Shown: positions 32,217 through 41,375 of the stretch, in pieces
Layout: every line of letters begins with the position of its first letter
Numbering within the stretch: the first letter of the stretch is position 1
Source: Paramoeba atlantica
Lineage: Eukaryota > Protista > Discosea
DNA length: 64,000 bases
Direction of reading: 5' to 3'
Assembly (NCBI GenBank): GCA_977017575.1
Contig: CDRNVI010000070.1
Span: 124,001-188,000, forward strand
Notes under the pieces: generated by a model
The model's input: only the letters and a program-made list of their open reading frames with translations
What the model was told of the DNA's origin: nothing
Databases searched by the model: none
Program-made: the position numbers and the translations under genes

Positions 32217-33386
32217 ATGAAAGGCACATTGCAACTTTTAAAAACATTAGCGGGTCCAAAAGCAAGGTGCACCGGAGGAGCACACAGCCTAGAATGTACT
32301 CCAAAGGCAACTTCACGCGTTGTTTCCGCCAATTCTGACAAAATACGAGTCCCGCTCAAATCTGACACGACAAAGCTGCGACCAAATAAAAGTGATAAAT
32401 CCACCGAAAGAGACACGAACGCCAGTTCAGCAGCCTCGTCCACAGAAATAGCTGCTACACGGCGTCACTTTGTCTGGACACCGCGCAGCCGCATTGATTA
32501 CAGCGTGTTTATTTCCAGTTCAAACTCAAAACGCCAAGATCGCTCCGCGAATCGTACTGGCTCAGCAAGGGAAGATAATGAAGCGGTCCAAGACGCTGCA
32601 AACTCCACATCAGGTGAGGAGGCAAGACCTGATAGTCAAGTTGAAGTTTATCAGTCGCATCAGGAGACGCCACCCCCAGTTGCATTGTCTCGTTTACCTA
32701 CCTTTGAAGCTTTCGACGAGAAGACTGTTAAACTGGGCACTCAGAATACTTGTTTATCATTGGCGATGACCAAAGAGAAAGAAAAGAAACAGATGGAGGT
32801 CAGAAAAGCGTACCTAAGGGGTGCCGAGGCTTTACGAGATAGTCAAGACCTTTATATTTCGATTGTCAATGAGGTACGATCCCGACCGTGGGTCACACTC
32901 TTTGGAGAACTTCCGGCTAGTAAGTTCGCTGTTTTCGCAAAGGAGATGCAGCAGCACGGAGATTACTCACAGCATTACCTCCGCACGCTTTGGAGACAGT
33001 TGCCACCAATACAACGTAAGCCATATGTACTTGTGTACGCTTCTGCACAGAAGAAAAAGCTTTACTCTTCGAGACTTGTGCGAGGGTCCAGAATAACGGC
33101 GAAAGCACTTTTTCTGCGAAGCGGGATCGTTCATGTCTCTCAGCAACCGGAGTTTAAACGAACGGGATTGAAAGTCCGCATCATGATGCTTCAGCAAGCA
33201 TGGTCCTACGGTGAAGTGCCGCGAAAGGTTGTGGAGCACTTCGAAACATTAGCAAAGAGTCATAGAGAGCTCATCACTAGGAATATTCATGAATTGGTTC
33301 GCATAAGAATCGGTCAGGTACTAGAGATTCGCAAACAAGAAGAGATGGCAAGCGAACGTGAATGCGACAGAAAAGAGTTATCGTAA
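32217..33386 (+). CDS. Basic protein with degenerate HMG-box-like repeats; possible kinetoplast/mitochondrial DNA-binding protein
   Basis: PASKFAVFAKE...LRTLWRQLPPIQRKPY fits an HMG-box pattern; second weaker box; presequence-like N-terminus. Confidence 0.55.
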   Translation: MKGTLQLLKTLAGPKARCTGGAHSLECTPKATSRVVSANSDKIRVPLKSDTTKLRPNKSDKSTERDTNASSAASSTEIAATRRHFVWTPRSRIDYSVFISSSNSKRQDRSANRTGSAREDNEAVQDAANSTSGEEARPDSQVEVYQSHQETPPPVALSRLPTFEAFDEKTVKLGTQNTCLSLAMTKEKEKKQMEVRKAYLRGAEALRDSQDLYISIVNEVRSRPWVTLFGELPASKFAVFAKEMQQHGDYSQHYLRTLWRQLPPIQRKPYVLVYASAQKKKLYSSRLVRGSRITAKALFLRSGIVHVSQQPEFKRTGLKVRIMMLQQAWSYGEVPRKVVEHFETLAKSHRELITRNIHELVRIRIGQVLEIRKQEEMASERECDRKELS

Positions 33387-33824
33387 AAAAAAATCAACTC
33401 TTTTTTTACCTTTGCGTGCCCTGTTCTGTATGCATTTCAGGTGCATTCAGTTATGATATCACGAACTAATATTGCCCGAAATTAATATGCATATTTAAGA
33501 ATACAAGCATCTCCTTTTACAGCTACTATCCTCCGCTCTACTTTGAAATAGTGTAGATGATAATGAGCGATCACTGTTTGTTGCTTCGCTTAAAATTTAA
33601 GGGAGTAAGAGGGACAAAATGATTCGGTGGTAAATAGAACAAATTTTCATTCTTCATCTCAATTATACTTTACTGTGCACATATTTTGCGATGCAAAAAT
33701 ATCCAAATTCATGGAAAGCTTTGACGAAACACCGATTGTAGGCATGACAGGTGAGGCATGTACAATGCTCGCGCATGTTATTGTTGGAATTGCGATGGAC
33801 ACGGTCGAATTGTCTGCCAAACTT

Positions 33825-33847
33825 CATAGCTGTCATTCGACGTCGAA
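33825..33847 (+). repeat. Left terminal inverted repeat
   Basis: Exact reverse complement of 37291-37313. Confidence 0.95.
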
Positions 33848-34006
33848 TTCGACGTCGTTCGACGGTCGAAAGGTCGAAACATTTTGAGTGCTTGTGTGGT
33901 TTCTGAAAGAATTTTTTTCAACAGAATATATGTTTATAAAATGTTTAAAAAATGTATTTGCAACCAGTCTTCTACTTTTTTGTGTTAATTTACTTCTTTT
34001 TTCACA

Positions 34007-36631
34007 ATGCACACCTCTGTTCGAGGAAGAGGGCGCATGATTCCTATCCGCATACCTTCTCCCCCAGCTCTTTCATCAGATGCAATCGTGCCAACTTTAG
34101 CTGAAGCAAATTCTTCCGAATCTGTTTCATCTACTACTCCTTCAGTTACTTCGGTTCGTGCCAAGAGAACCAATTCGGCGAAGAAGAATAGAACTGCCAT
34201 GCAGCGAGATGCTTCCACGGAAGCAGCAGATGGTCCTACCCAGAGCAGATTTGAAATTTCCGATAACGTTCCGTCAGGGAGTTATGTTCCTGTCTCAGTA
34301 CGACGAGAGTGTACCGCGAGGCTTGAAGAGGAAATGTCGTCCTCTCCATCACAACAGGCAAGCTCTGTAAGGCAAGTAGTTCGAAAACAGCTTGTACAGG
34401 ACCCAATGCGGTTTCCCCGTATTTCGACAAAATTCTTTCGTGAACGCTGCTTGGGAATGGATACCCCGCCTGGTAGAACGAAAGATTTGGAGAAGAAAAA
34501 CAAAGAGTGTCGCGAATACGCCGAGAAATATCCTCGGCCCCATCTCGTGAATACCATGGGCCAGCGGACTCACATAAAGTGTCGCGACTGTCCGTGGTGG
34601 AGTCATTCGCTCCATAACAACCATTACTATCACCATATCAATCACACTTGTTTAGTGCGCGAGGGACAGAGAATCGCAAACGAACCGGAACTTTTTTCAC
34701 TGACCCCGAACGACAATTCAATGAGTGTAAATGTTTTTGTTCGTCGCTGCGTTCCCTGTCTTGTGGCAAAGACGAACTTGTCATGCAAAGCTGCACACGC
34801 TTTACTTCGTAACTATGAAGAATTACGCCCCAAGCGAGCAAATACTGAAGAAATTCTCAATGCACTCGGCAACAATCACAGGGTCATGCGTGATTGGGAG
34901 AAGGACTTGGCCAACGAAATATGGGAAAAAATGATTTCAAAAATCGATATTCATCCTTTCTTCGGGGTAGCTGTGGATGCTGGGGTTGATTCCGTGCTCA
35001 ACGAGCACGTATTAGTAGGGGTGGTGTATGTTTCAGATGAGCAATATCTATTACCACCCATGTATCATCCGAAGCGGAAGGCATTCAACGGCAAAGAAAC
35101 AGCTGAGAGTTTGGTTAATACATTGAATTCTATTCTCGGCATTACCCTGGTACGAAAAATGAGGTTTTTAATGGTGGATGGCTGTGCCGTTAACCACGTG
35201 GCCCGTGATGAGGCAGAAGGAGAATTAAAAAGAATATATGATCGCGTTCAAAGAATTGGGGAGTCGGACTGGATAAACTTCGGAAACCGGGCCGTGGACA
35301 TGATGCCACACGTCTCCTTACTATCTTGCTTTGGTCATTTTCTCAATAACCTCGCGATGGATGCGATGAAACCCTTTCAGGAAACACCCCTTTTTGAACT
35401 TAAAAAGCTCTTCAGACAAACATTTTATGGACATGACAAGATCTGTACGAAGAAGGGGCGGTATCGTGGTGTGGCCCTAGACGTTCTTCTTGGATCTTTC
35501 GACGAAGAAACTAACAAAGCGGAACAATTTTTCACTCAATGGTATGGGGGGCTGTCTAGCAATAAACTGGACGATGAATATCAGACAGAGCTGGTGTGTC
35601 AGCTTCGCAGCAGCGTACAAATTTTGAAACAATATGCGCCCGATGAAGCTGATATAATTTTGGCGGAACTGAACGCTCAGCATGAAAATATTCCTCGCTG
35701 TCGTGACGCACTTTCATTGTATGGACCTCAAGTAATTGAAGCTGTTCGTAGAGCAAAGGATGTACACGGCATTACGGCTCCTAAGTTAGGGGGAGTTACT
35801 CGCTGGTGCCATGATAAGTTCAGCAGCATTTCCTTCTTTTCTACTCAGTTACCTACTGTTGTCGCGTTCCTGAAGCAAGAACTGGAAAACCCCCGAGTTT
35901 GTCAGTCTGTACGTAAGTGTGCGGATCTTATTGCTCGGGAAGGGGTAGATAACCTGGCGACTTCCGCAAAATATTTTCTTGAAGAACTAGCTCCTATCCA
36001 GAAAGCGTTACAAAAATTTTCGGATTTAGACGGTACGCCTTTAGCAACGGGAGTTTGGCCAACTTTAGAAAGATTACGGAAGGCTAGTCGGGTGGGAAGC
36101 TGCAGTGAAGCTTTTGAATGTGCCCTCAAGCATCACATAAATCGACTTTCAGTTCATCACAATATGAAATATTGGGAAGACGTCATGTGGTTTGCACCGG
36201 ATTTCATTGCACTACGCGCCCGGAAAGCCGGTCTCGAACCAATTCATTTCAGTCGTGCTAACGACCTTTTTCGAGGCGGTTCTCCCATTTTTCAAATTAC
36301 GGAAAATGAATGGAATGAATATGTGAATTGCGTCGACTACGAATGGGATTCGCGAGTGCACAAGTGCGAATTGCATTGGTGGCAAACAGTTGGAGTCTAC
36401 AAATACCCAGGTATACATCAAGCGGCGATACATTATTTATGGGTACCCCCTTTAGTGACGAAATGTGATTCTTGGATGTCGGTTATGAACACCAAGTACA
36501 ACTCCCGTCAATCATCCATGGGCACTCAAACAGTACAAAACTCTATGCTGTTACGGGGGAACTACGACAAACTCGGGTATCTTGACAATTTGGAACAGTT
36601 AGGATCAGCGGGAAATGGGGATTCGGTGTAA
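34007..36631 (+). CDS. hAT-family transposase, 874 aa
   Basis: BED-like CRDC...HHINHTC; VAVD324; LMVD391G; C441FGH; TR599W; C-terminal HWW..VGVYKYPGIHQAAIHYLWVPPLVTKCD821SWMS (hAT dimerisation-domain pattern). Confidence 0.85.
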   Translation: MHTSVRGRGRMIPIRIPSPPALSSDAIVPTLAEANSSESVSSTTPSVTSVRAKRTNSAKKNRTAMQRDASTEAADGPTQSRFEISDNVPSGSYVPVSVRRECTARLEEEMSSSPSQQASSVRQVVRKQLVQDPMRFPRISTKFFRERCLGMDTPPGRTKDLEKKNKECREYAEKYPRPHLVNTMGQRTHIKCRDCPWWSHSLHNNHYYHHINHTCLVREGQRIANEPELFSLTPNDNSMSVNVFVRRCVPCLVAKTNLSCKAAHALLRNYEELRPKRANTEEILNALGNNHRVMRDWEKDLANEIWEKMISKIDIHPFFGVAVDAGVDSVLNEHVLVGVVYVSDEQYLLPPMYHPKRKAFNGKETAESLVNTLNSILGITLVRKMRFLMVDGCAVNHVARDEAEGELKRIYDRVQRIGESDWINFGNRAVDMMPHVSLLSCFGHFLNNLAMDAMKPFQETPLFELKKLFRQTFYGHDKICTKKGRYRGVALDVLLGSFDEETNKAEQFFTQWYGGLSSNKLDDEYQTELVCQLRSSVQILKQYAPDEADIILAELNAQHENIPRCRDALSLYGPQVIEAVRRAKDVHGITAPKLGGVTRWCHDKFSSISFFSTQLPTVVAFLKQELENPRVCQSVRKCADLIAREGVDNLATSAKYFLEELAPIQKALQKFSDLDGTPLATGVWPTLERLRKASRVGSCSEAFECALKHHINRLSVHHNMKYWEDVMWFAPDFIALRARKAGLEPIHFSRANDLFRGGSPIFQITENEWNEYVNCVDYEWDSRVHKCELHWWQTVGVYKYPGIHQAAIHYLWVPPLVTKCDSWMSVMNTKYNSRQSSMGTQTVQNSMLLRGNYDKLGYLDNLEQLGSAGNGDSV

Positions 36632-37290
36632 CTTCTTTCAAGCTTCCGAATTACTTAATGGCTCCTGATGCGAGTCTGCTTTTTTTCTGATACGTCATAA
36701 ATTCATAACCCATTATAATATTGTTATATTGTATTACTGTATAATTATTTATGTATGGATGTTTCATGTATTGTTCGGAAACTGGTATTTTCTGGGGTTT
36801 TTTCCATGTTTTGTCTCATACTTCAGGACCATTAAGGCTAAACTTTTTCCCCACACTTAAATTTTTCTTGTATTATTGCAACGCGAGATATTTTGTGCTT
36901 AGCTATACGGCAACAGTAAACGTCATAAGCTTATACTATGATAATGACTAGTACAGTCATAATTTTCCGTATCTTTTTATTAAACTTCATTAATTACGTA
37001 TTTGAACATGTTTCAAATAAAAGGTGACGCATTTAACACGGTTAGAACTTCCTAGCGGTCTGACGAACAATCTGACGACAACCATACGTTGCTACTTTCT
37101 TATTCTCTGGTAGTCATCTATTCGTCCGAATACCATAGCAAATTACTGTAGTGAAAAGAATCCGTCGATCGAAACATTTTTTCAAGTGCTGCACATGAAC
37201 ACAAGAATCCCCCATTTTTTTCCTTCGTTCGACGTCGAAAGACCCATTTTTTCGACGTCGAAAGGCATTCGAAGACGTCGAATTGCAATT

Positions 37291-37313
37291 TTCGACGTCG
37301 AATGACAGCTATG
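37291..37313 (-). repeat. Right terminal inverted repeat
   Basis: Exact reverse complement of 33825-33847. Confidence 0.95.
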
Positions 37314-38000
37314 AAACTTAGTGTAAGTTTCAAAAGGAATAAACGAGCCAAAAATTCAAGACCTTTACAGCGTCGTGATGCTACAGAGACGCAGACATTC
37401 CCTTTACAAGTGTCAAAAGCAATAGAACAACCGGCGAAAAGTGCAAAAGGCGGAACATACCCATGAGCTGAGGGATGGCAAGAACGAAGAAAAAGCCAAG
37501 TGGAATATAAAATCAATTTACTAAATATGCGTGCGCACAATATGTATCAGCCACAATTCAAAAGTCAAATGATACATTTAGTAAAAGAGCACAAAAAGTA
37601 TCCCCCTAGCATTGAAAATATCTGTGCATCCTCAAAGCGGATCAGACTTGTTGGCGGTACGGAACAACCTGCAACGCAGCATCAGAATTTAGAAGAAGTA
37701 ATCATAAACGTCATTACGCTTGAAGATATTCGAATTTCTCATAAAGTTTTGCAACAAAGAAGGAATTTCTTTAGACAATTATAAAGTTTCGCATAGAGGA
37801 GACGTCAAAAAATAGAGGAATGCCTACTAGAGGCTAAGTTTTCTTGCTATTCTGTGATATACAGAATATATACAGTATGATAGTATCCGTGCATCGGTAA
37901 GGTTAATGCTCTACGATTTCCCATGGATATAATTTTGAAAATCATGGCCTATGTTCCCTCACAGTCCAATAGCTCTTTCCTCCTCATTTTTTTTATCTTA

Positions 38001-41000
38001 ATGGCCGACAGTCCGAAAACATTACTGAATTCGAATGAAGATCTGGGAGAGATGTGGAAACTAGTGCCTGCCTTCATAAGATCAAAAGGCCTGATCCGTC
38101 AGCATCTCTCAAGCTTTAATCACTTCATTGAACATGAGATTGCAAAAATTTTGGATGCAAACAGGGAAGTTCGACCTACTAAGAACGACAAAATTTTTCT
38201 TCGTTACTCGAAGATTCGAGTAGACCCCCCGACGGAACTTGGAAACAATACAACCCGACCAGTAACACCGCAGGAATGTCGCTTGCGTGACCTGACCTAT
38301 CTTGGTGGGATTCGAGTACTATACACGTACACTAAGCAAAGTCCTGACGGGAAGATTATAACAAAAACGGGATCCAGCCGTATTGGAGGAATTCCAATTA
38401 TGGTACGGTCACACAAATGTTGTCTCCATGGTAAACCGGCAGAACACCTTGTGCGCGCTCAAGAATGTCCTCATGACCCGGGTGGCTACTTCATAGTAAG
38501 TGGTACAGAAAAGGTGATCGTGGTGCAGGAACAACAAAGCAAGAATAGAATAATGGTCGAAAAAGATGGGTTCAACCGCATCTTTGCTACAGTGCATTCC
38601 AGCACTCACTTTAGTAAAGGTAGAGCGACAATAGTGGAAAGGAATAGACACCTGTACGTGAAGCACAACAGTCTTGATGGTTTAATACCAGTTCTTGTCC
38701 TACTGAAGGCGTTCGGTATGGTATGGGAACAAGAGATAGTTCTTAGTGTAGGAACAGCACCCGAATTCTTAGAATTTTTCGGAAATTGTATCCATGATTG
38801 CCACCAGTTAGGAATATTTACTCAAGATCAGGCGCTCAATTATCTAGGCGGTCGTTACACTCGACGTCGTGATTTGGACGAGAGAGGGTTTCCTATATCG
38901 ACAGGAGACTGCGCTGCAGAGTTTCTAGCGAAAGTCTTTCTATGTCACATTCAGGAAGGTGAGGTGTCACGCCACTGGAACTTTCGATACAAAGCAGTCT
39001 ACGTGTGTCTTATGATTAGACGCCTCATCAGTGCTATGCATGATGAAAAACTTGTAGACGATAAAGACTTTTTCGGAAATAAACGTTTCGAACTTGCCGG
39101 TACACTGCTGAGCTACTTATTTGAGGACCAGTTCAAGTTTTACAACAAGTCACTGAGAGATGAAGCTGATCGAGTACTCTCGAAGCCCAATACAGCAGGT
39201 ACGTGGGACTTTCCCCGGCATATGGAAAAATGCGACATGGAAAAAGCATTTTGCCGTGCCATATCTTCTGGCCAGTGGAAGGTTTCTCGCTTCAGTATTG
39301 ATGTATCCGGAGTGACACAGATTTTAACACGTCAATCCTACATTCATACCGTAGGGATGTTGACTAAGCTTACTTCAACGTTTGATAAAACCAGAAAAGT
39401 TACTACACCGCGTGCACTGCACGGCAGTCAGTGGGGCTTGATGTGCCCGAGTGACACCCCTGAGGGCGAAAGCATAGGTATTGTTAAGAACTTTGCTCTT
39501 CTTTGTGAGGTCACAAACGATAATGATGAGTTGAAAAACAAGGTTGTTCAGCTGTGTCAGTACCTTGGTGTCGAACTCTTAGAGTCGGTATCACCAGTGG
39601 ATGTGAATCAAGAGTGGACTGTCTTCTGCGACGGAGAAGTGATTGGAATTCACCGCTATCCAACTTATCTCATAGATCAGATCCGAGAGCTCCGACGTCG
39701 TGGACGCCTAGACTCCTTCCTTTCCATTTACCGTCAACAGAGTCAACGGGCTGTTCACGTGTCGTGTGATGGTGGACGTCTCTGTCGACCTGTTTTAATT
39801 GTAAAAGAGGGAGTGCCGGTTTTGCAGCCGTACCACTTGCAGCAACTGTCACAACGGCTACGTTCGTTTGACGATTTCGTTCTTGAAGGCATTATTGAAT
39901 ATCTTGATGCAAACGAAGAGAACGACGCACTGATTGCGGTAAATTTGGCTGATGTGACTACACGACACACCCATCTCGAAATCGCAAGTTTTCCCTTGCT
40001 TGGTACAGTTGCTGGCCTTATTCCCTTTCCTCATCACAATCAAAGTCCTCGTAACACTTATCAGTGTGCAATGGGGAAGCAAGCACTTGGAGCTCTCGCC
40101 TACAATCAACACAAGCGGATAGACACCAACGCCCTTCTCCTTGTCTACCCCCAACGTCCCCTTTGCACCACCCGAACCCTTGAGCTCACCTCCTTCCACG
40201 AACTCGGGGCCGGGATCAACGCCATGGTCGCCGTCATGTCCTACTCCGGCTACGACCTCGAGGACGCCCAAATCCACAACGGTACCGCCATCGATCGCGG
40301 CTTCATGCGGTGTGTCTCCCTACGAAAAGCCGTCACCCTGGTCCAAGAAAACGAAACCCTTCGTGTCGTCCCCCCCACCCACCCGGTACAATCCACCACC
40401 CCCGAGGTTGTGACCCCCCCGGACCACGACGACGGGGTCGTGCATGCCGGCACCCGGGTCAAACCCGGAGCCCTGCTTGCGCAGAAACTGCTCCCCACCT
40501 CCACAAGCGCGAACCCCATCGCCTCCCCGCTCCGTTTCGAGGGCCCGCAGCCCGCGGTGGTGGACCGCGTGCTGCGGGCCCCCACGGAGCCCTGTGGCTC
40601 GGTGCTCAAGGTGTTACTCCGGGACACCCGGCGCCCCGAGGTCGGGGACAAGTTCAGCTCCCGGCACGGGCAGAAAGGGGTGTGCGGGCTGATTGCGTTC
40701 CAGCCCGATCTCCCCTTTAATGATCAAGGGATGGCCCCGGATATTATCATGAACCCCCACGGGTTCCCCTCCCGTATGACGGTGGGGAAGATGCTGGAGA
40801 TGCTGTCCGGGAAGGCCGCGGTGCTGAAAGGGGGCGCCGGGGATGGGACCGCGTTCGGGGGGGATACGCTGCAGGACATGGGGAAGGACCTGGTGAGGTA
40901 CGGGTTTAGCTACCATGGGAAGGATGTGTTTTATAGCGGGATTACGGGGGAGGTGTTGCCGGGTTATGTGTTTTACGGACCGATTTACTATCAGAAATTG

Positions 41001-41375
41001 AAGCATATGGTGATTGATAAGGTGCATGCGCGCGCCCATGGTCCAACCTCGACGTTGACACGGCAACCGATGCAGGGACGGAATCGGAATGGGGGGCAAC
41101 GGCTGGGTGAGATGGAACGGGACTGTTTCGTTGGATACGGTGCCTCCATGTTGCTGCACGAACGAATGTTACTCTCCAGCGATGCTACTGTGGTGAGTGT
41201 GTGTCGTGAGTGTGGTTTTATCGGAGCTCCCGATGCCCCGTGCCCCTACTGCCACAAGACATCGAAATCGGGGAAAATCACGATTCCGTATGCATGTAAA
41301 CTTTTGTTTCAAGAATTGCAAGGCATGGGTATTCGTCCTCGCATTAAGGTCAGAAGTGCTGTTCATGGAATGTGA
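38001..41375 (+). CDS. RPC2: RNA polymerase III second-largest subunit
   Basis: KGLIRQHLSSFNHF, ECPHDPGGYFIV.GTEKVI.VQEQ.SKNRI, GDKFSSRHGQKG, MNPHGFPSRMT, IPYACKLLFQELQ; likely start at ATG 38001. Confidence 0.93.
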   Translation: MADSPKTLLNSNEDLGEMWKLVPAFIRSKGLIRQHLSSFNHFIEHEIAKILDANREVRPTKNDKIFLRYSKIRVDPPTELGNNTTRPVTPQECRLRDLTYLGGIRVLYTYTKQSPDGKIITKTGSSRIGGIPIMVRSHKCCLHGKPAEHLVRAQECPHDPGGYFIVSGTEKVIVVQEQQSKNRIMVEKDGFNRIFATVHSSTHFSKGRATIVERNRHLYVKHNSLDGLIPVLVLLKAFGMVWEQEIVLSVGTAPEFLEFFGNCIHDCHQLGIFTQDQALNYLGGRYTRRRDLDERGFPISTGDCAAEFLAKVFLCHIQEGEVSRHWNFRYKAVYVCLMIRRLISAMHDEKLVDDKDFFGNKRFELAGTLLSYLFEDQFKFYNKSLRDEADRVLSKPNTAGTWDFPRHMEKCDMEKAFCRAISSGQWKVSRFSIDVSGVTQILTRQSYIHTVGMLTKLTSTFDKTRKVTTPRALHGSQWGLMCPSDTPEGESIGIVKNFALLCEVTNDNDELKNKVVQLCQYLGVELLESVSPVDVNQEWTVFCDGEVIGIHRYPTYLIDQIRELRRRGRLDSFLSIYRQQSQRAVHVSCDGGRLCRPVLIVKEGVPVLQPYHLQQLSQRLRSFDDFVLEGIIEYLDANEENDALIAVNLADVTTRHTHLEIASFPLLGTVAGLIPFPHHNQSPRNTYQCAMGKQALGALAYNQHKRIDTNALLLVYPQRPLCTTRTLELTSFHELGAGINAMVAVMSYSGYDLEDAQIHNGTAIDRGFMRCVSLRKAVTLVQENETLRVVPPTHPVQSTTPEVVTPPDHDDGVVHAGTRVKPGALLAQKLLPTSTSANPIASPLRFEGPQPAVVDRVLRAPTEPCGSVLKVLLRDTRRPEVGDKFSSRHGQKGVCGLIAFQPDLPFNDQGMAPDIIMNPHGFPSRMTVGKMLEMLSGKAAVLKGGAGDGTAFGGDTLQDMGKDLVRYGFSYHGKDVFYSGITGEVLPGYVFYGPIYYQKLKHMVIDKVHARAHGPTSTLTRQPMQGRNRNGGQRLGEMERDCFVGYGASMLLHERMLLSSDATVVSVCRECGFIGAPDAPCPYCHKTSKSGKITIPYACKLLFQELQGMGIRPRIKVRSAVHGM
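40120..41110. other. GC-rich island with a C-to-G strand-skew switch, inside RPC2
   Basis: 35 of 50 codons end in C at 40131-40280; 33 of 50 end in G at 40776-40925 (hand count). Confidence 0.85.

What the first reader, a model, noticed from the sequence alone, without database searches (positions are those of the whole stretch)
34976..37319. Non-canonical hAT chemistry: D-D-D triad and 6-bp TSD
Seen: VPPLVTKCD821SWMS aligns gap-free with the hAT consensus IPATSASSERVFS, putting Asp (codon at 36467) at the catalytic Glu position and Ser at the following Arg. D324 and D391 fit the first two acids. The TSD is 6 bp, whereas most hATs make 8 bp. An alternative parse is a 25-bp TIR with a 2-bp AC duplication. 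Inference: this may be a divergent lineage with altered target spacing; perfect TIRs argue against long-term inactivation.
Basis: partly seen in the sequence, partly recalled or inferred. Interest (0 to 1): 0.75.

Follow-up and report, generated by a model that had tools for sequence, protein, structure and literature searches.

The report
hAT transposon with Asp-Asp-Asp site
This is an intact, very recently mobile cut-and-paste hAT-type jumping gene in a trypanosome-related protist; its whole lineage has aspartate where hAT enzymes normally have their catalytic glutamate and duplicates 6 rather than 8 target bases, which is an unusual variant of a well-known element type.

Summary
Both observations hold. 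The element is window 33825-37313. It has perfect 23-bp inverted ends (CATAGCTG...), a 6-bp target duplication (AAACTT) and one 874-aa ORF.

Twelve independent insertions from three subfamilies (36-40% protein identity) all have perfect 6-bp duplications and none has 8.

The protein is a hAT transposase:
- Hermes is by far the best structural match (Z 22.5; next unrelated match 10.8).
- A family profile matches Hermes at E 1.8e-13.
- 20 of 33 clade members match Pfam's hAT dimerisation domain.

D821 aligns without gaps to the Glu of the hAT SER motif, both in Hermes (E572) and in a ZBED1-like hAT. In an exhaustive search, 50 of 52 relatives covering that column have Asp. These include Diplonema papillatum proteins.

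The window copy is 100% identical over 3489 bp to a copy on another contig that has a different duplication, so Asp-type enzymes were active very recently.

Caveats:
- hATs with 6-bp duplications are already named in Repbase (hAT6).
- I found no paper describing a D-D-D hAT.
- I had no residue-level 3D superposition.

The scan had already noted this family on other DNA of the same genome (s1-403570), with the same reading.

The parts
33819..33824 (.). left copy of the 6-bp target-site duplication, AAACTT
33825..33847 (+). left terminal inverted repeat, 23 bp, CATAGCTGTCATTCGACGTCGAA
   Evidence: 24 such ends in the genome, none for the reversed control pattern
33836..33880 (.). left subterminal repeats of the TTCGACGTCGAA type; likely transposase-binding sites (inferred)
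   Evidence: (the TCGACGTCGA core occurs 4 times in the window, all in the element's ends, against 0.08 expected)
34007..36631 (+). transposase ORF, 874 aa, no intron
34580..34651 (+). N-terminal zinc-finger-like motif C192-x2-C195-x14-H210-x3/4-(C/H), BED-like
   Evidence: Cys, Cys and His are conserved in the clade members that have an N-terminus; Pfam zf-BED was not detected
34976..34978 (+). D324, first catalytic Asp, in strand beta-1
35177..35179 (+). D391, second catalytic Asp, at the end of strand beta-4
35327..35338 (+). hAT CxxH motif (C441, H444)
   Evidence: aligned to Hermes INCSSHLL
35801..35806 (+). R599-W600 of the hAT TRW motif (counterpart of Hermes PTRW)
36467..36469 (+). D821, Asp at the position of the catalytic Glu of the hAT SER motif
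37222..37290 (.). right subterminal repeats (TTCGACGTCGAA-type units)
37291..37313 (-). right terminal inverted repeat, 23 bp, a perfect complement of the left one
37314..37319 (.). right copy of the 6-bp target-site duplication, AAACTT

Best explanation
Window 33825-37313 is an autonomous cut-and-paste DNA transposon of the hAT superfamily that was mobile very recently.

Inferred mechanism: the 874-aa transposase binds the TTCGACGTCGAA-type repeats near both ends, probably through its N-terminal Cx2C...H zinc finger. It cuts and joins DNA with an RNase-H-type active site made of D324, D391 and D821. It inserts with a 6-bp stagger, which repair turns into the 6-bp duplication.

The element belongs to a distinct clade of hAT transposases. 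The clade occurs in kinetoplastid-related protists, in Diplonema papillatum and in environmental sequences. In this clade the conserved hAT motif S-E-R-x-F-S reads (C/V)-D-S-x-x-S, so the third metal-binding residue is Asp.

Shown here: the anatomy, the hAT fold, the homology of the motif, the conservation of Asp, the 6-bp duplication and the recent copy gain. Inferred: which domain binds the repeats, the two-metal chemistry with Asp, and hairpin formation as in Hermes.
For: Structure of the element:
- Perfect 23-bp ends and a 6-bp duplication.
- 12 independent insertions in 3 subfamilies, all with a perfect 6-bp duplication.

hAT membership:
- AlphaFold2 model with mean pLDDT 76 and the core mostly above 85.
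- Hermes chains are the ten best of the 12 Foldseek hits with E <= 1e-3, all at probability 1.00.
- VIA-align Z 22.5, rmsd 3.6 A over 399 residues, model 281-860 against Hermes 136-609. The next matches are ISCth4 at 10.8, integrases near 10 and the P element at 8.5.
- The clade profile matches Hermes at E 1.8e-13, with the DxW-type first Asp, CxxH, TRW and the C-terminal block aligned.
- PF05699 is matched by 20 of 33 clade members, and above Pfam's cut-off in same-genome paralogues.

Asp at the Glu position:
- Gap-free alignments to Hermes and to a ZBED1-like hAT.
- 50 of 52 relatives have Asp. One exception, P0002 (His), has a near-identical fragment, P0068, with Asp.
- The Diplonema proteins have D, D, CxxH and Asp.
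- Both Asp codons are used among paralogues.

Recent activity:
- The C70 (window) and C23 copies are 100% identical over 3489 bp but have different duplications. A third copy differs by 1 nt.
- An internally deleted copy and a frameshifted subfamily also have perfect duplications.

The Hermes catalytic residues D180, D248 and E572 are taken from PMC2533014.
Against: - The window protein itself scores only 13.2 bits on PF05699, below the 21.4 cut-off.
- No model coordinates were available, so I could not measure whether the D821 carboxylate reaches the metal site.
- D391 was not aligned to Hermes D248 residue by residue. Its assignment rests on strand order and conservation.
- The D324-to-D180 alignment comes from a weak stretch (i-Evalue 0.39).
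- No transposition assay exists.
- Other ORFs carrying PF05699 exist in the genome.
Confidence: 0.85

Rival explanations
1. The element is simply a member of the Repbase hAT6 group (hAT elements with 6-bp duplications, Kapitonov and Jurka 2007). In that case nothing about it, possibly including the Asp, would be new.
For: PMC12730594 states that hAT families with 5-bp and 6-bp duplications are named hAT5 and hAT6. This element's duplication is 6 bp.
Against: - The same paper places hAT5 and hAT6 inside a lineage with Blackjack and other animal hATs.
- This clade's profile retrieved only 254 proteins at E <= 1e-3 out of 1.84 billion. Every listed hit that covers the motif lacks the canonical SER motif, and nearly all have Asp there. 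It therefore lies far from the mainstream hATs.
- The relatives whose source organism I could name are euglenozoan, not animal.
Confidence: 0.15
2. D821 is not a working catalytic residue. On this view the family's proteins are inactive, and the copies are moved in trans by another, Glu-type hAT transposase of the same genome.
For: Other PF05699-bearing ORFs of unread type exist in the genome. Earlier scan notes report hAT-like elements with 8-bp duplications in this genome (not checked here).
Against: - Three subfamilies, each with its own end sequences, keep long open ORFs, the Asp, and all the other hAT motifs at 36-40% identity.
- Asp is kept across 50 of 52 distant relatives, with synonymous codon changes.
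- A helper enzyme that makes 8-bp duplications would not leave 6-bp ones.
Confidence: 0.04
3. The element belongs to another superfamily whose duplications are about 6 bp or whose fold is related (Dada, P, Kolobok or Transib), and the hAT resemblance is only the shared RNase-H fold.
For: Dada elements make 6-7-bp duplications (my own knowledge). The window protein's own Pfam hit is below the cut-off.
Against: - Hermes matches over 399 residues, including the all-helical insertion domain, at Z 22.5, against 8.5 for the P element.
- The sequence profile matches Hermes at E 1.8e-13.
- The CxxH and TRW motifs and the hAT dimerisation domain are present.
Confidence: 0.02

Closest known systems
Hermes transposase (hAT superfamily; PDB 2BW3, 4D1Q, 6DWW, 8EDG)
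   Same: - Same fold: an RNase-H core split by a large helical insertion domain.
- Same C-terminal dimerisation region, CxxH and TRW motifs, and first two Asp residues.
- Short inverted ends with subterminal repeats, and an N-terminal zinc finger.

   Different: - Only about 12% identity.
- Asp-Ser replaces the Glu-Arg of the SER motif.
- A 6-bp rather than 8-bp duplication.
- About 50 extra residues between the second Asp and CxxH.
- A long disordered N-terminus (residues 1-129).
Repbase hAT6 group (and hAT5, hAT7): hAT elements with shorter duplications
   Same: Classed as hAT by the transposase, but with a 6-bp duplication (PMC12730594).
   Different: hAT6 is reported inside an animal, Blackjack-related lineage. 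This clade is very distant from mainstream hATs and is found in Euglenozoa and in environmental data. The residue hAT6 carries at the SER position is unknown to me and was not testable here.
mariner versus Tc1 (DDD versus DDE within one superfamily) and piggyBac (DDD)
   Same: These are precedents for Asp serving as the third metal ligand of an RNase-H-type transposase, and for D/E differences between sister lineages (PMC2533014; otherwise my own knowledge).
   Different: They belong to different superfamilies. No comparable D/E split within hAT turned up in my searches.

Membership tests
hAT superfamily | RNase-H-like catalytic core interrupted by a large all-helical insertion domain, as in Hermes | tested here: met
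   Model strands 319-328, 333-342, 345-348, 385-391 and 437-439, then helices 442-810, then helix 818-830. Hermes Z 22.5, rmsd 3.6 A over 399 residues. Hermes chains are the ten best Foldseek hits, all at probability 1.00.
hAT superfamily | C-terminal hAT dimerisation domain (Pfam PF05699) | tested here: met
   The window protein is below the cut-off (13.2 against 21.4 bits). However, 20 of 33 clade members match, up to 33.4 bits. Same-genome paralogues score 33.8-34.9 bits. The profile matches the Hermes C-terminus at i-Evalue 3.7e-8.
hAT superfamily | D-D-E catalytic triad, with the Glu in the S-E-R-x-F-S motif | tested here: not met
   The first two Asp residues are present and conserved. 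The third position is Asp ((C/V)-D-S) in 50 of 52 relatives. This departs from the residue's identity, not from its position.
hAT superfamily | CxxH motif after the second Asp, and a TRW motif in the insertion domain | tested here: met
   C441/H444 and R599/W600 are conserved across the clade and aligned to Hermes INCSSH and PTRW.
hAT superfamily | 8-bp target-site duplication | tested here: not met
   12 of 12 independent insertions have a perfect 6-bp duplication; none of the ten tested for 8 bp matches. Named hAT subgroups with 5, 6 and 7 bp exist (PMC12730594), so this does not exclude membership.
hAT superfamily | Short terminal inverted repeats with subterminal transposase-binding repeats | tested here: met
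   23-bp perfect ends. The TCGACGTCGA core occurs 4 times, all in the ends, against 0.08 expected. Binding itself was not tested.
hAT superfamily | N-terminal BED-type zinc finger | tested here: inconclusive
   Cx2Cx14Hx3-4(C/H) is conserved and overlaps a predicted strand-helix unit. Pfam zf-BED gives no hit.
hAT superfamily | Excision through a hairpin on the flanking DNA | not testable with these tools
   This needs biochemistry or excision footprints.
Repbase hAT6 group | hAT transposase with a 6-bp duplication | tested here: met
Repbase hAT6 group | Phylogenetic grouping with the named hAT6 families | not testable with these tools
   No Repbase sequences were on hand. PMC12730594 places hAT6 among animal, Blackjack-like hATs.
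P element / THAP9 transposases | P-type fold with a GTP-binding insertion domain | tested here: not met
   Z 8.5 at rmsd 7.4 A, against 22.5 for Hermes.

The most novel reading that the evidence does not exclude
This is a deep, so far unnamed branch of the hAT superfamily. It is centred on Euglenozoa (prokinetoplastid-like flagellates, diplonemids) and marine or environmental protists. It switched its third catalytic residue from Glu to Asp, inserts with a 6-bp stagger, and is still transposing in this genome. It would be the first active DNA transposon family described for the kinetoplastid lineage. It would also be a natural test of how the hAT active site tolerates the shorter acid.
Probability: 0.55. 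Interest if true: 0.6.

Novelty: new variant of a known kind. Interest (0 to 1): 0.5.

Why it matters
- The D-D-E triad is treated as a constant of hAT transposases, and in Hermes E572 is indispensable (PMC2533014). A whole, evidently active clade with Asp shows that the hAT active site can be built with the shorter acid. It offers ready-made natural enzymes for D-to-E swap experiments.
- The clade adds an independent case of a shortened target stagger within hAT.
- The kinetoplastid papers I could search report only Merlin relics among DNA transposons and none in trypanosomatids (PMC8101967, PMC12278014). An intact, compact, intron-less element that has just moved in a kinetoplastid relative could become a candidate genetic tool for this group.

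Tried and rejected
Readings rejected:
- The parse with a 25-bp inverted repeat and a 2-bp AC duplication. Flanks of other copies do not share AC; they share 6 bp.
- An 8-bp duplication: none of the ten insertions tested for 8 bp matches.
- E768 (the EW motif) as an alternative third acid. It aligns to Hermes' own DEFEFY stretch in the dimerisation region, which is not the catalytic residue.

Searches that gave little:
- Single-sequence search of the PDB found nothing.
- Pfam on the window protein gave only a sub-threshold hit.
- The word-indexed protein search gave 3 hits with the single protein and 4 with the alignment.
- The metagenome scan failed with alignment A2. With A3 it gave one locus, L055, whose CATACC... 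ends are only 80% complementary and which has no clean duplication. It is uninformative.
- Literature searches for a D-D-D hAT found nothing.

Tools unavailable:
Further subfamilies and the other PF05699 loci could therefore not be read.
Full report
**Anatomy**

The flagged span runs from the D324 codon to the right-hand duplication of one element, which occupies window 33825-37313. Its ends are a perfect 23-bp inverted repeat, CATAGCTGTCATTCGACGTCGAA (33825-33847 and 37291-37313). AAACTT flanks it on both sides.

One search reports a 25-nt inverted repeat. This arises only because the duplication begins with AA and ends with TT.

Inside the ends lie TTCGACGTCGAA-type palindromic units. The 10-nt core occurs four times in the 64-kb window, all within the element's ends, against 0.08 expected.

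A single open frame, 34007-36631 (+), encodes 874 aa. The element sits between two + strand genes, about 600 bp upstream of an RNA polymerase III second-largest subunit gene.

**Host**

The genome has 45.7 Mb in 248 contigs. Its RPC2 protein is closest to:
- two unnamed ENA proteins (65% and 62% identity);
- the EukProt transcriptome PhM_4 (59%);
- Bodo and trypanosomatids (about 49%).

I read this as a deep-branching relative of kinetoplastids. That PhM_4 and PhF_6 are prokinetoplastid isolates is my own recollection.

**Target duplication**

The genome holds 24 ends of this family and many related ORFs. I located ends and flanks in three subfamilies:
- the window's family, including a 95% variant and an internally deleted copy;
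- a family at about 40% protein identity, with ends CATACCCCTGCC...;
- a family at about 36%, with ends CATACCCTGGTGG....

Twelve independent insertions have identical 6-bp flanks: ACACAT, AAACTT, AAGAAT, GATCGA, TGTATC, GGGGGT, GCCTTT, AAAATA, GTGATC, TAGAAT, TATTTA and TAATAT. None of the ten tested for 8 bp matches.

The C39 and C40 copies are the same insertion inside an inverted duplicated segment, and I counted them once. One copy (L004) has a mutated terminal base and an imperfect duplication. One copy (L029) has a damaged right end.

The 6-bp duplication is therefore a property of the clade in this genome. The alternative parse with a 2-bp duplication is wrong.

**Superfamily**

Taken alone, the protein gives only a sub-threshold Pfam hit to the hAT dimerisation domain (13.2 bits) and nothing in the PDB by sequence. 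Three further lines of evidence settle the question.

1. Relatives. An exhaustive profile search of 1.84 billion representative proteins found 254 relatives at E <= 1e-3. Of 33 aligned clade members, 20 match PF05699 at E <= 0.01, four of ten distant ones above Pfam's cut-off. Same-genome paralogues score 33.8-34.9 bits.
2. Sequence homology to Hermes. A profile of 33 members matches Hermes transposase at E 1.8e-13.
3. Structure. An AlphaFold2 model (mean pLDDT 76, core mostly above 85) has Hermes as its outstanding match:
   - Foldseek E about 1e-7, probability 1.00;
   - VIA-align Z 22.5, rmsd 3.6 A over 399 residues, model 281-860 against Hermes 136-609;
   - ISCth4 follows at 10.8, retroviral integrases at about 10 and the P element at 8.5.

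**Catalytic residues**

PMC2533014 names D180, D248 and E572 as the Hermes residues whose change abolishes or alters activity. E572A and E572C are dead at every step.

- **First Asp.** In one search the profile aligns D324 (FFGVAVDAGVD) to the first Asp of Hermes ATIDLWTD. The stretch is weak, but D324 lies in the middle of predicted strand 319-328.
- **Second Asp.** D391 ends strand 385-391 in the motif MVDGCAVNH. I did not obtain a residue-level alignment of D391 to Hermes D248, so its assignment rests on strand order and conservation.
- **Other hAT motifs.** C441/H444 align to Hermes INCSSH, and R599/W600 align to Hermes PTRW.
- **Third acid.** WW...YP...A..YLWVPPLVTKCDSWMS aligns without a gap to Hermes WW...YP...A..LLSIPASSAASERTFS. 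This puts D821 on the Glu and S822 on the Arg. hhalign against a canonical ZBED1-like hAT (P0302) gives the same register, IPATSTESERIFS. D821 lies near the start of helix 818-830, the element that carries the third acid in this fold.

Conservation across the clade:
- Among 52 relatives covering this column, 50 have Asp, one has His and one has Gly.
- The His protein (P0002, EukProt PhF_6) has a near-identical fragment, P0068, with Asp, so its His is a private change.
- D324, D391, C441, H444, R599 and W600 are conserved in the same set.
- Diplonema papillatum proteins (KAJ9438132.1 and others) belong to the clade and carry D, D, CxxH and AADS.
- Paralogues in this genome encode the Asp with both GAT and GAC, with synonymous changes in the neighbouring codons. 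The residue itself is therefore under selection.

The only other conserved acid nearby, E768, aligns to Hermes' own DEFEFY stretch and is not a substitute for the catalytic residue.

**Activity**

- The window copy (C70) and the C23 copy are identical at all 3489 positions but sit at different sites with different duplications.
- The C3 copy differs by one base, and two others differ by 10-14.
- An internally deleted 2417-bp copy and a frameshifted 95% subfamily also have perfect duplications at independent sites.
- Three subfamilies with different ends each keep long ORFs.

The simplest reading is that Asp-type transposases are functional and were active very recently. This is an inference, because no assay exists.

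**Comparison with what is known**

- hAT elements usually make 8-bp duplications. Repbase already names hAT5 and hAT6 for families with 5 and 6 bp, and a 2025 paper adds hAT7. That paper places hAT5 and hAT6 within an animal, Blackjack-related lineage (PMC12730594). The 6-bp duplication alone is therefore not new.
- I found no paper describing a hAT lineage with Asp at the Glu position. I could not inspect Repbase proteins, so I cannot exclude that hAT6 shares it.
- D/E variation in the third position is known in other superfamilies (Tc1 versus mariner, and piggyBac).
- For kinetoplastids, the papers I could search report only Merlin relics in Bodo and Perkinsela and no DNA transposons in trypanosomatids (PMC8101967, PMC12278014). 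The Diplonema genome paper does not mention hAT.

**Earlier notes of this scan**

After forming my reading I found that another copy of this family in the same genome had been reported with the same conclusion (s1-403570). Other notes mention hAT-like non-coding elements with 8-bp duplications in this genome (s1-369953; not checked by me).

**Limits**

- No coordinates of the model were available, so the geometry of the three acids was not measured.
- The one metagenomic relative with flanks (L055) was too decayed to show a duplication.

**Verdict**

The element is a new variant of a known kind: a hAT lineage with a D-D-D site and a 6-bp stagger. It is of moderate interest.

Noticed in passing
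L010-L015 (G000 C39:500627-504087, C40:345299-348759, C10:207342-210802): A 95%-identical subfamily has its transposase split into two overlapping frames (residues 1-516 and 498-873). The same split occurs in copies at two independent sites, each with a perfect 6-bp duplication. So either the broken version was mobilised in trans or the frame change is tolerated. One base of the inverted end differs (GTCGTTCG).
   Followed up: partly
L014/L010 (C39) versus L011/L015 (C40): The two loci have reverse-complementary flanks around the same insertion. They are an inverted segmental duplication or an assembly duplicate, not two transposition events. L021 and L026 are likewise 99.4% identical over 5 kb, flanks included.
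   Followed up: partly
L008 (G000 C40:894188-896604): An internally deleted 2417-bp copy of the window's element, with perfect ends and the duplication TGTATC. It is a non-autonomous derivative.
   Followed up: partly
window 33837-33846, 37229-37238, 37252-37261, 37292-37301: The subterminal repeat core TCGACGTCGA is a perfect palindrome. It occurs only in the element's ends, one exact copy on the left and three on the right, so the two ends are asymmetric.
   Followed up: partly
window 32217-33386, 34007-36631, 37923-41375: The transposase ORF has the same orientation as both flanking genes and has no intron. It could be expressed by read-through of a kinetoplastid-style polycistronic unit. 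No processing signals were examined.
   Followed up: no
G000 loci (e.g. C56:30817-31029, C30:921185-921379, C47:203153-203344, C37:321917-322087): Some thirty further stretches match the hAT dimerisation domain above Pfam's cut-off, outside the loci listed for this family. I could not read whether they carry Glu or Asp.
   Followed up: no
L055:1638-4342 (metagenome contig Ga0169931_10047381): A distant clade member (21-28% identity to other distant members). Its ends begin with CATACC like two subfamilies here, and it has GGTACCG-type subterminal repeats. The ends are only 80% complementary and there is no clean duplication.
   Followed up: partly
window 37923-41375: The RPC2 gene next to the element is 59% identical to the EukProt PhM_4 transcriptome protein and 62-65% identical to two unnamed ENA proteins, against about 49% to Bodo and trypanosomatids. 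This places the host near the base of the kinetoplastids.
   Followed up: partly
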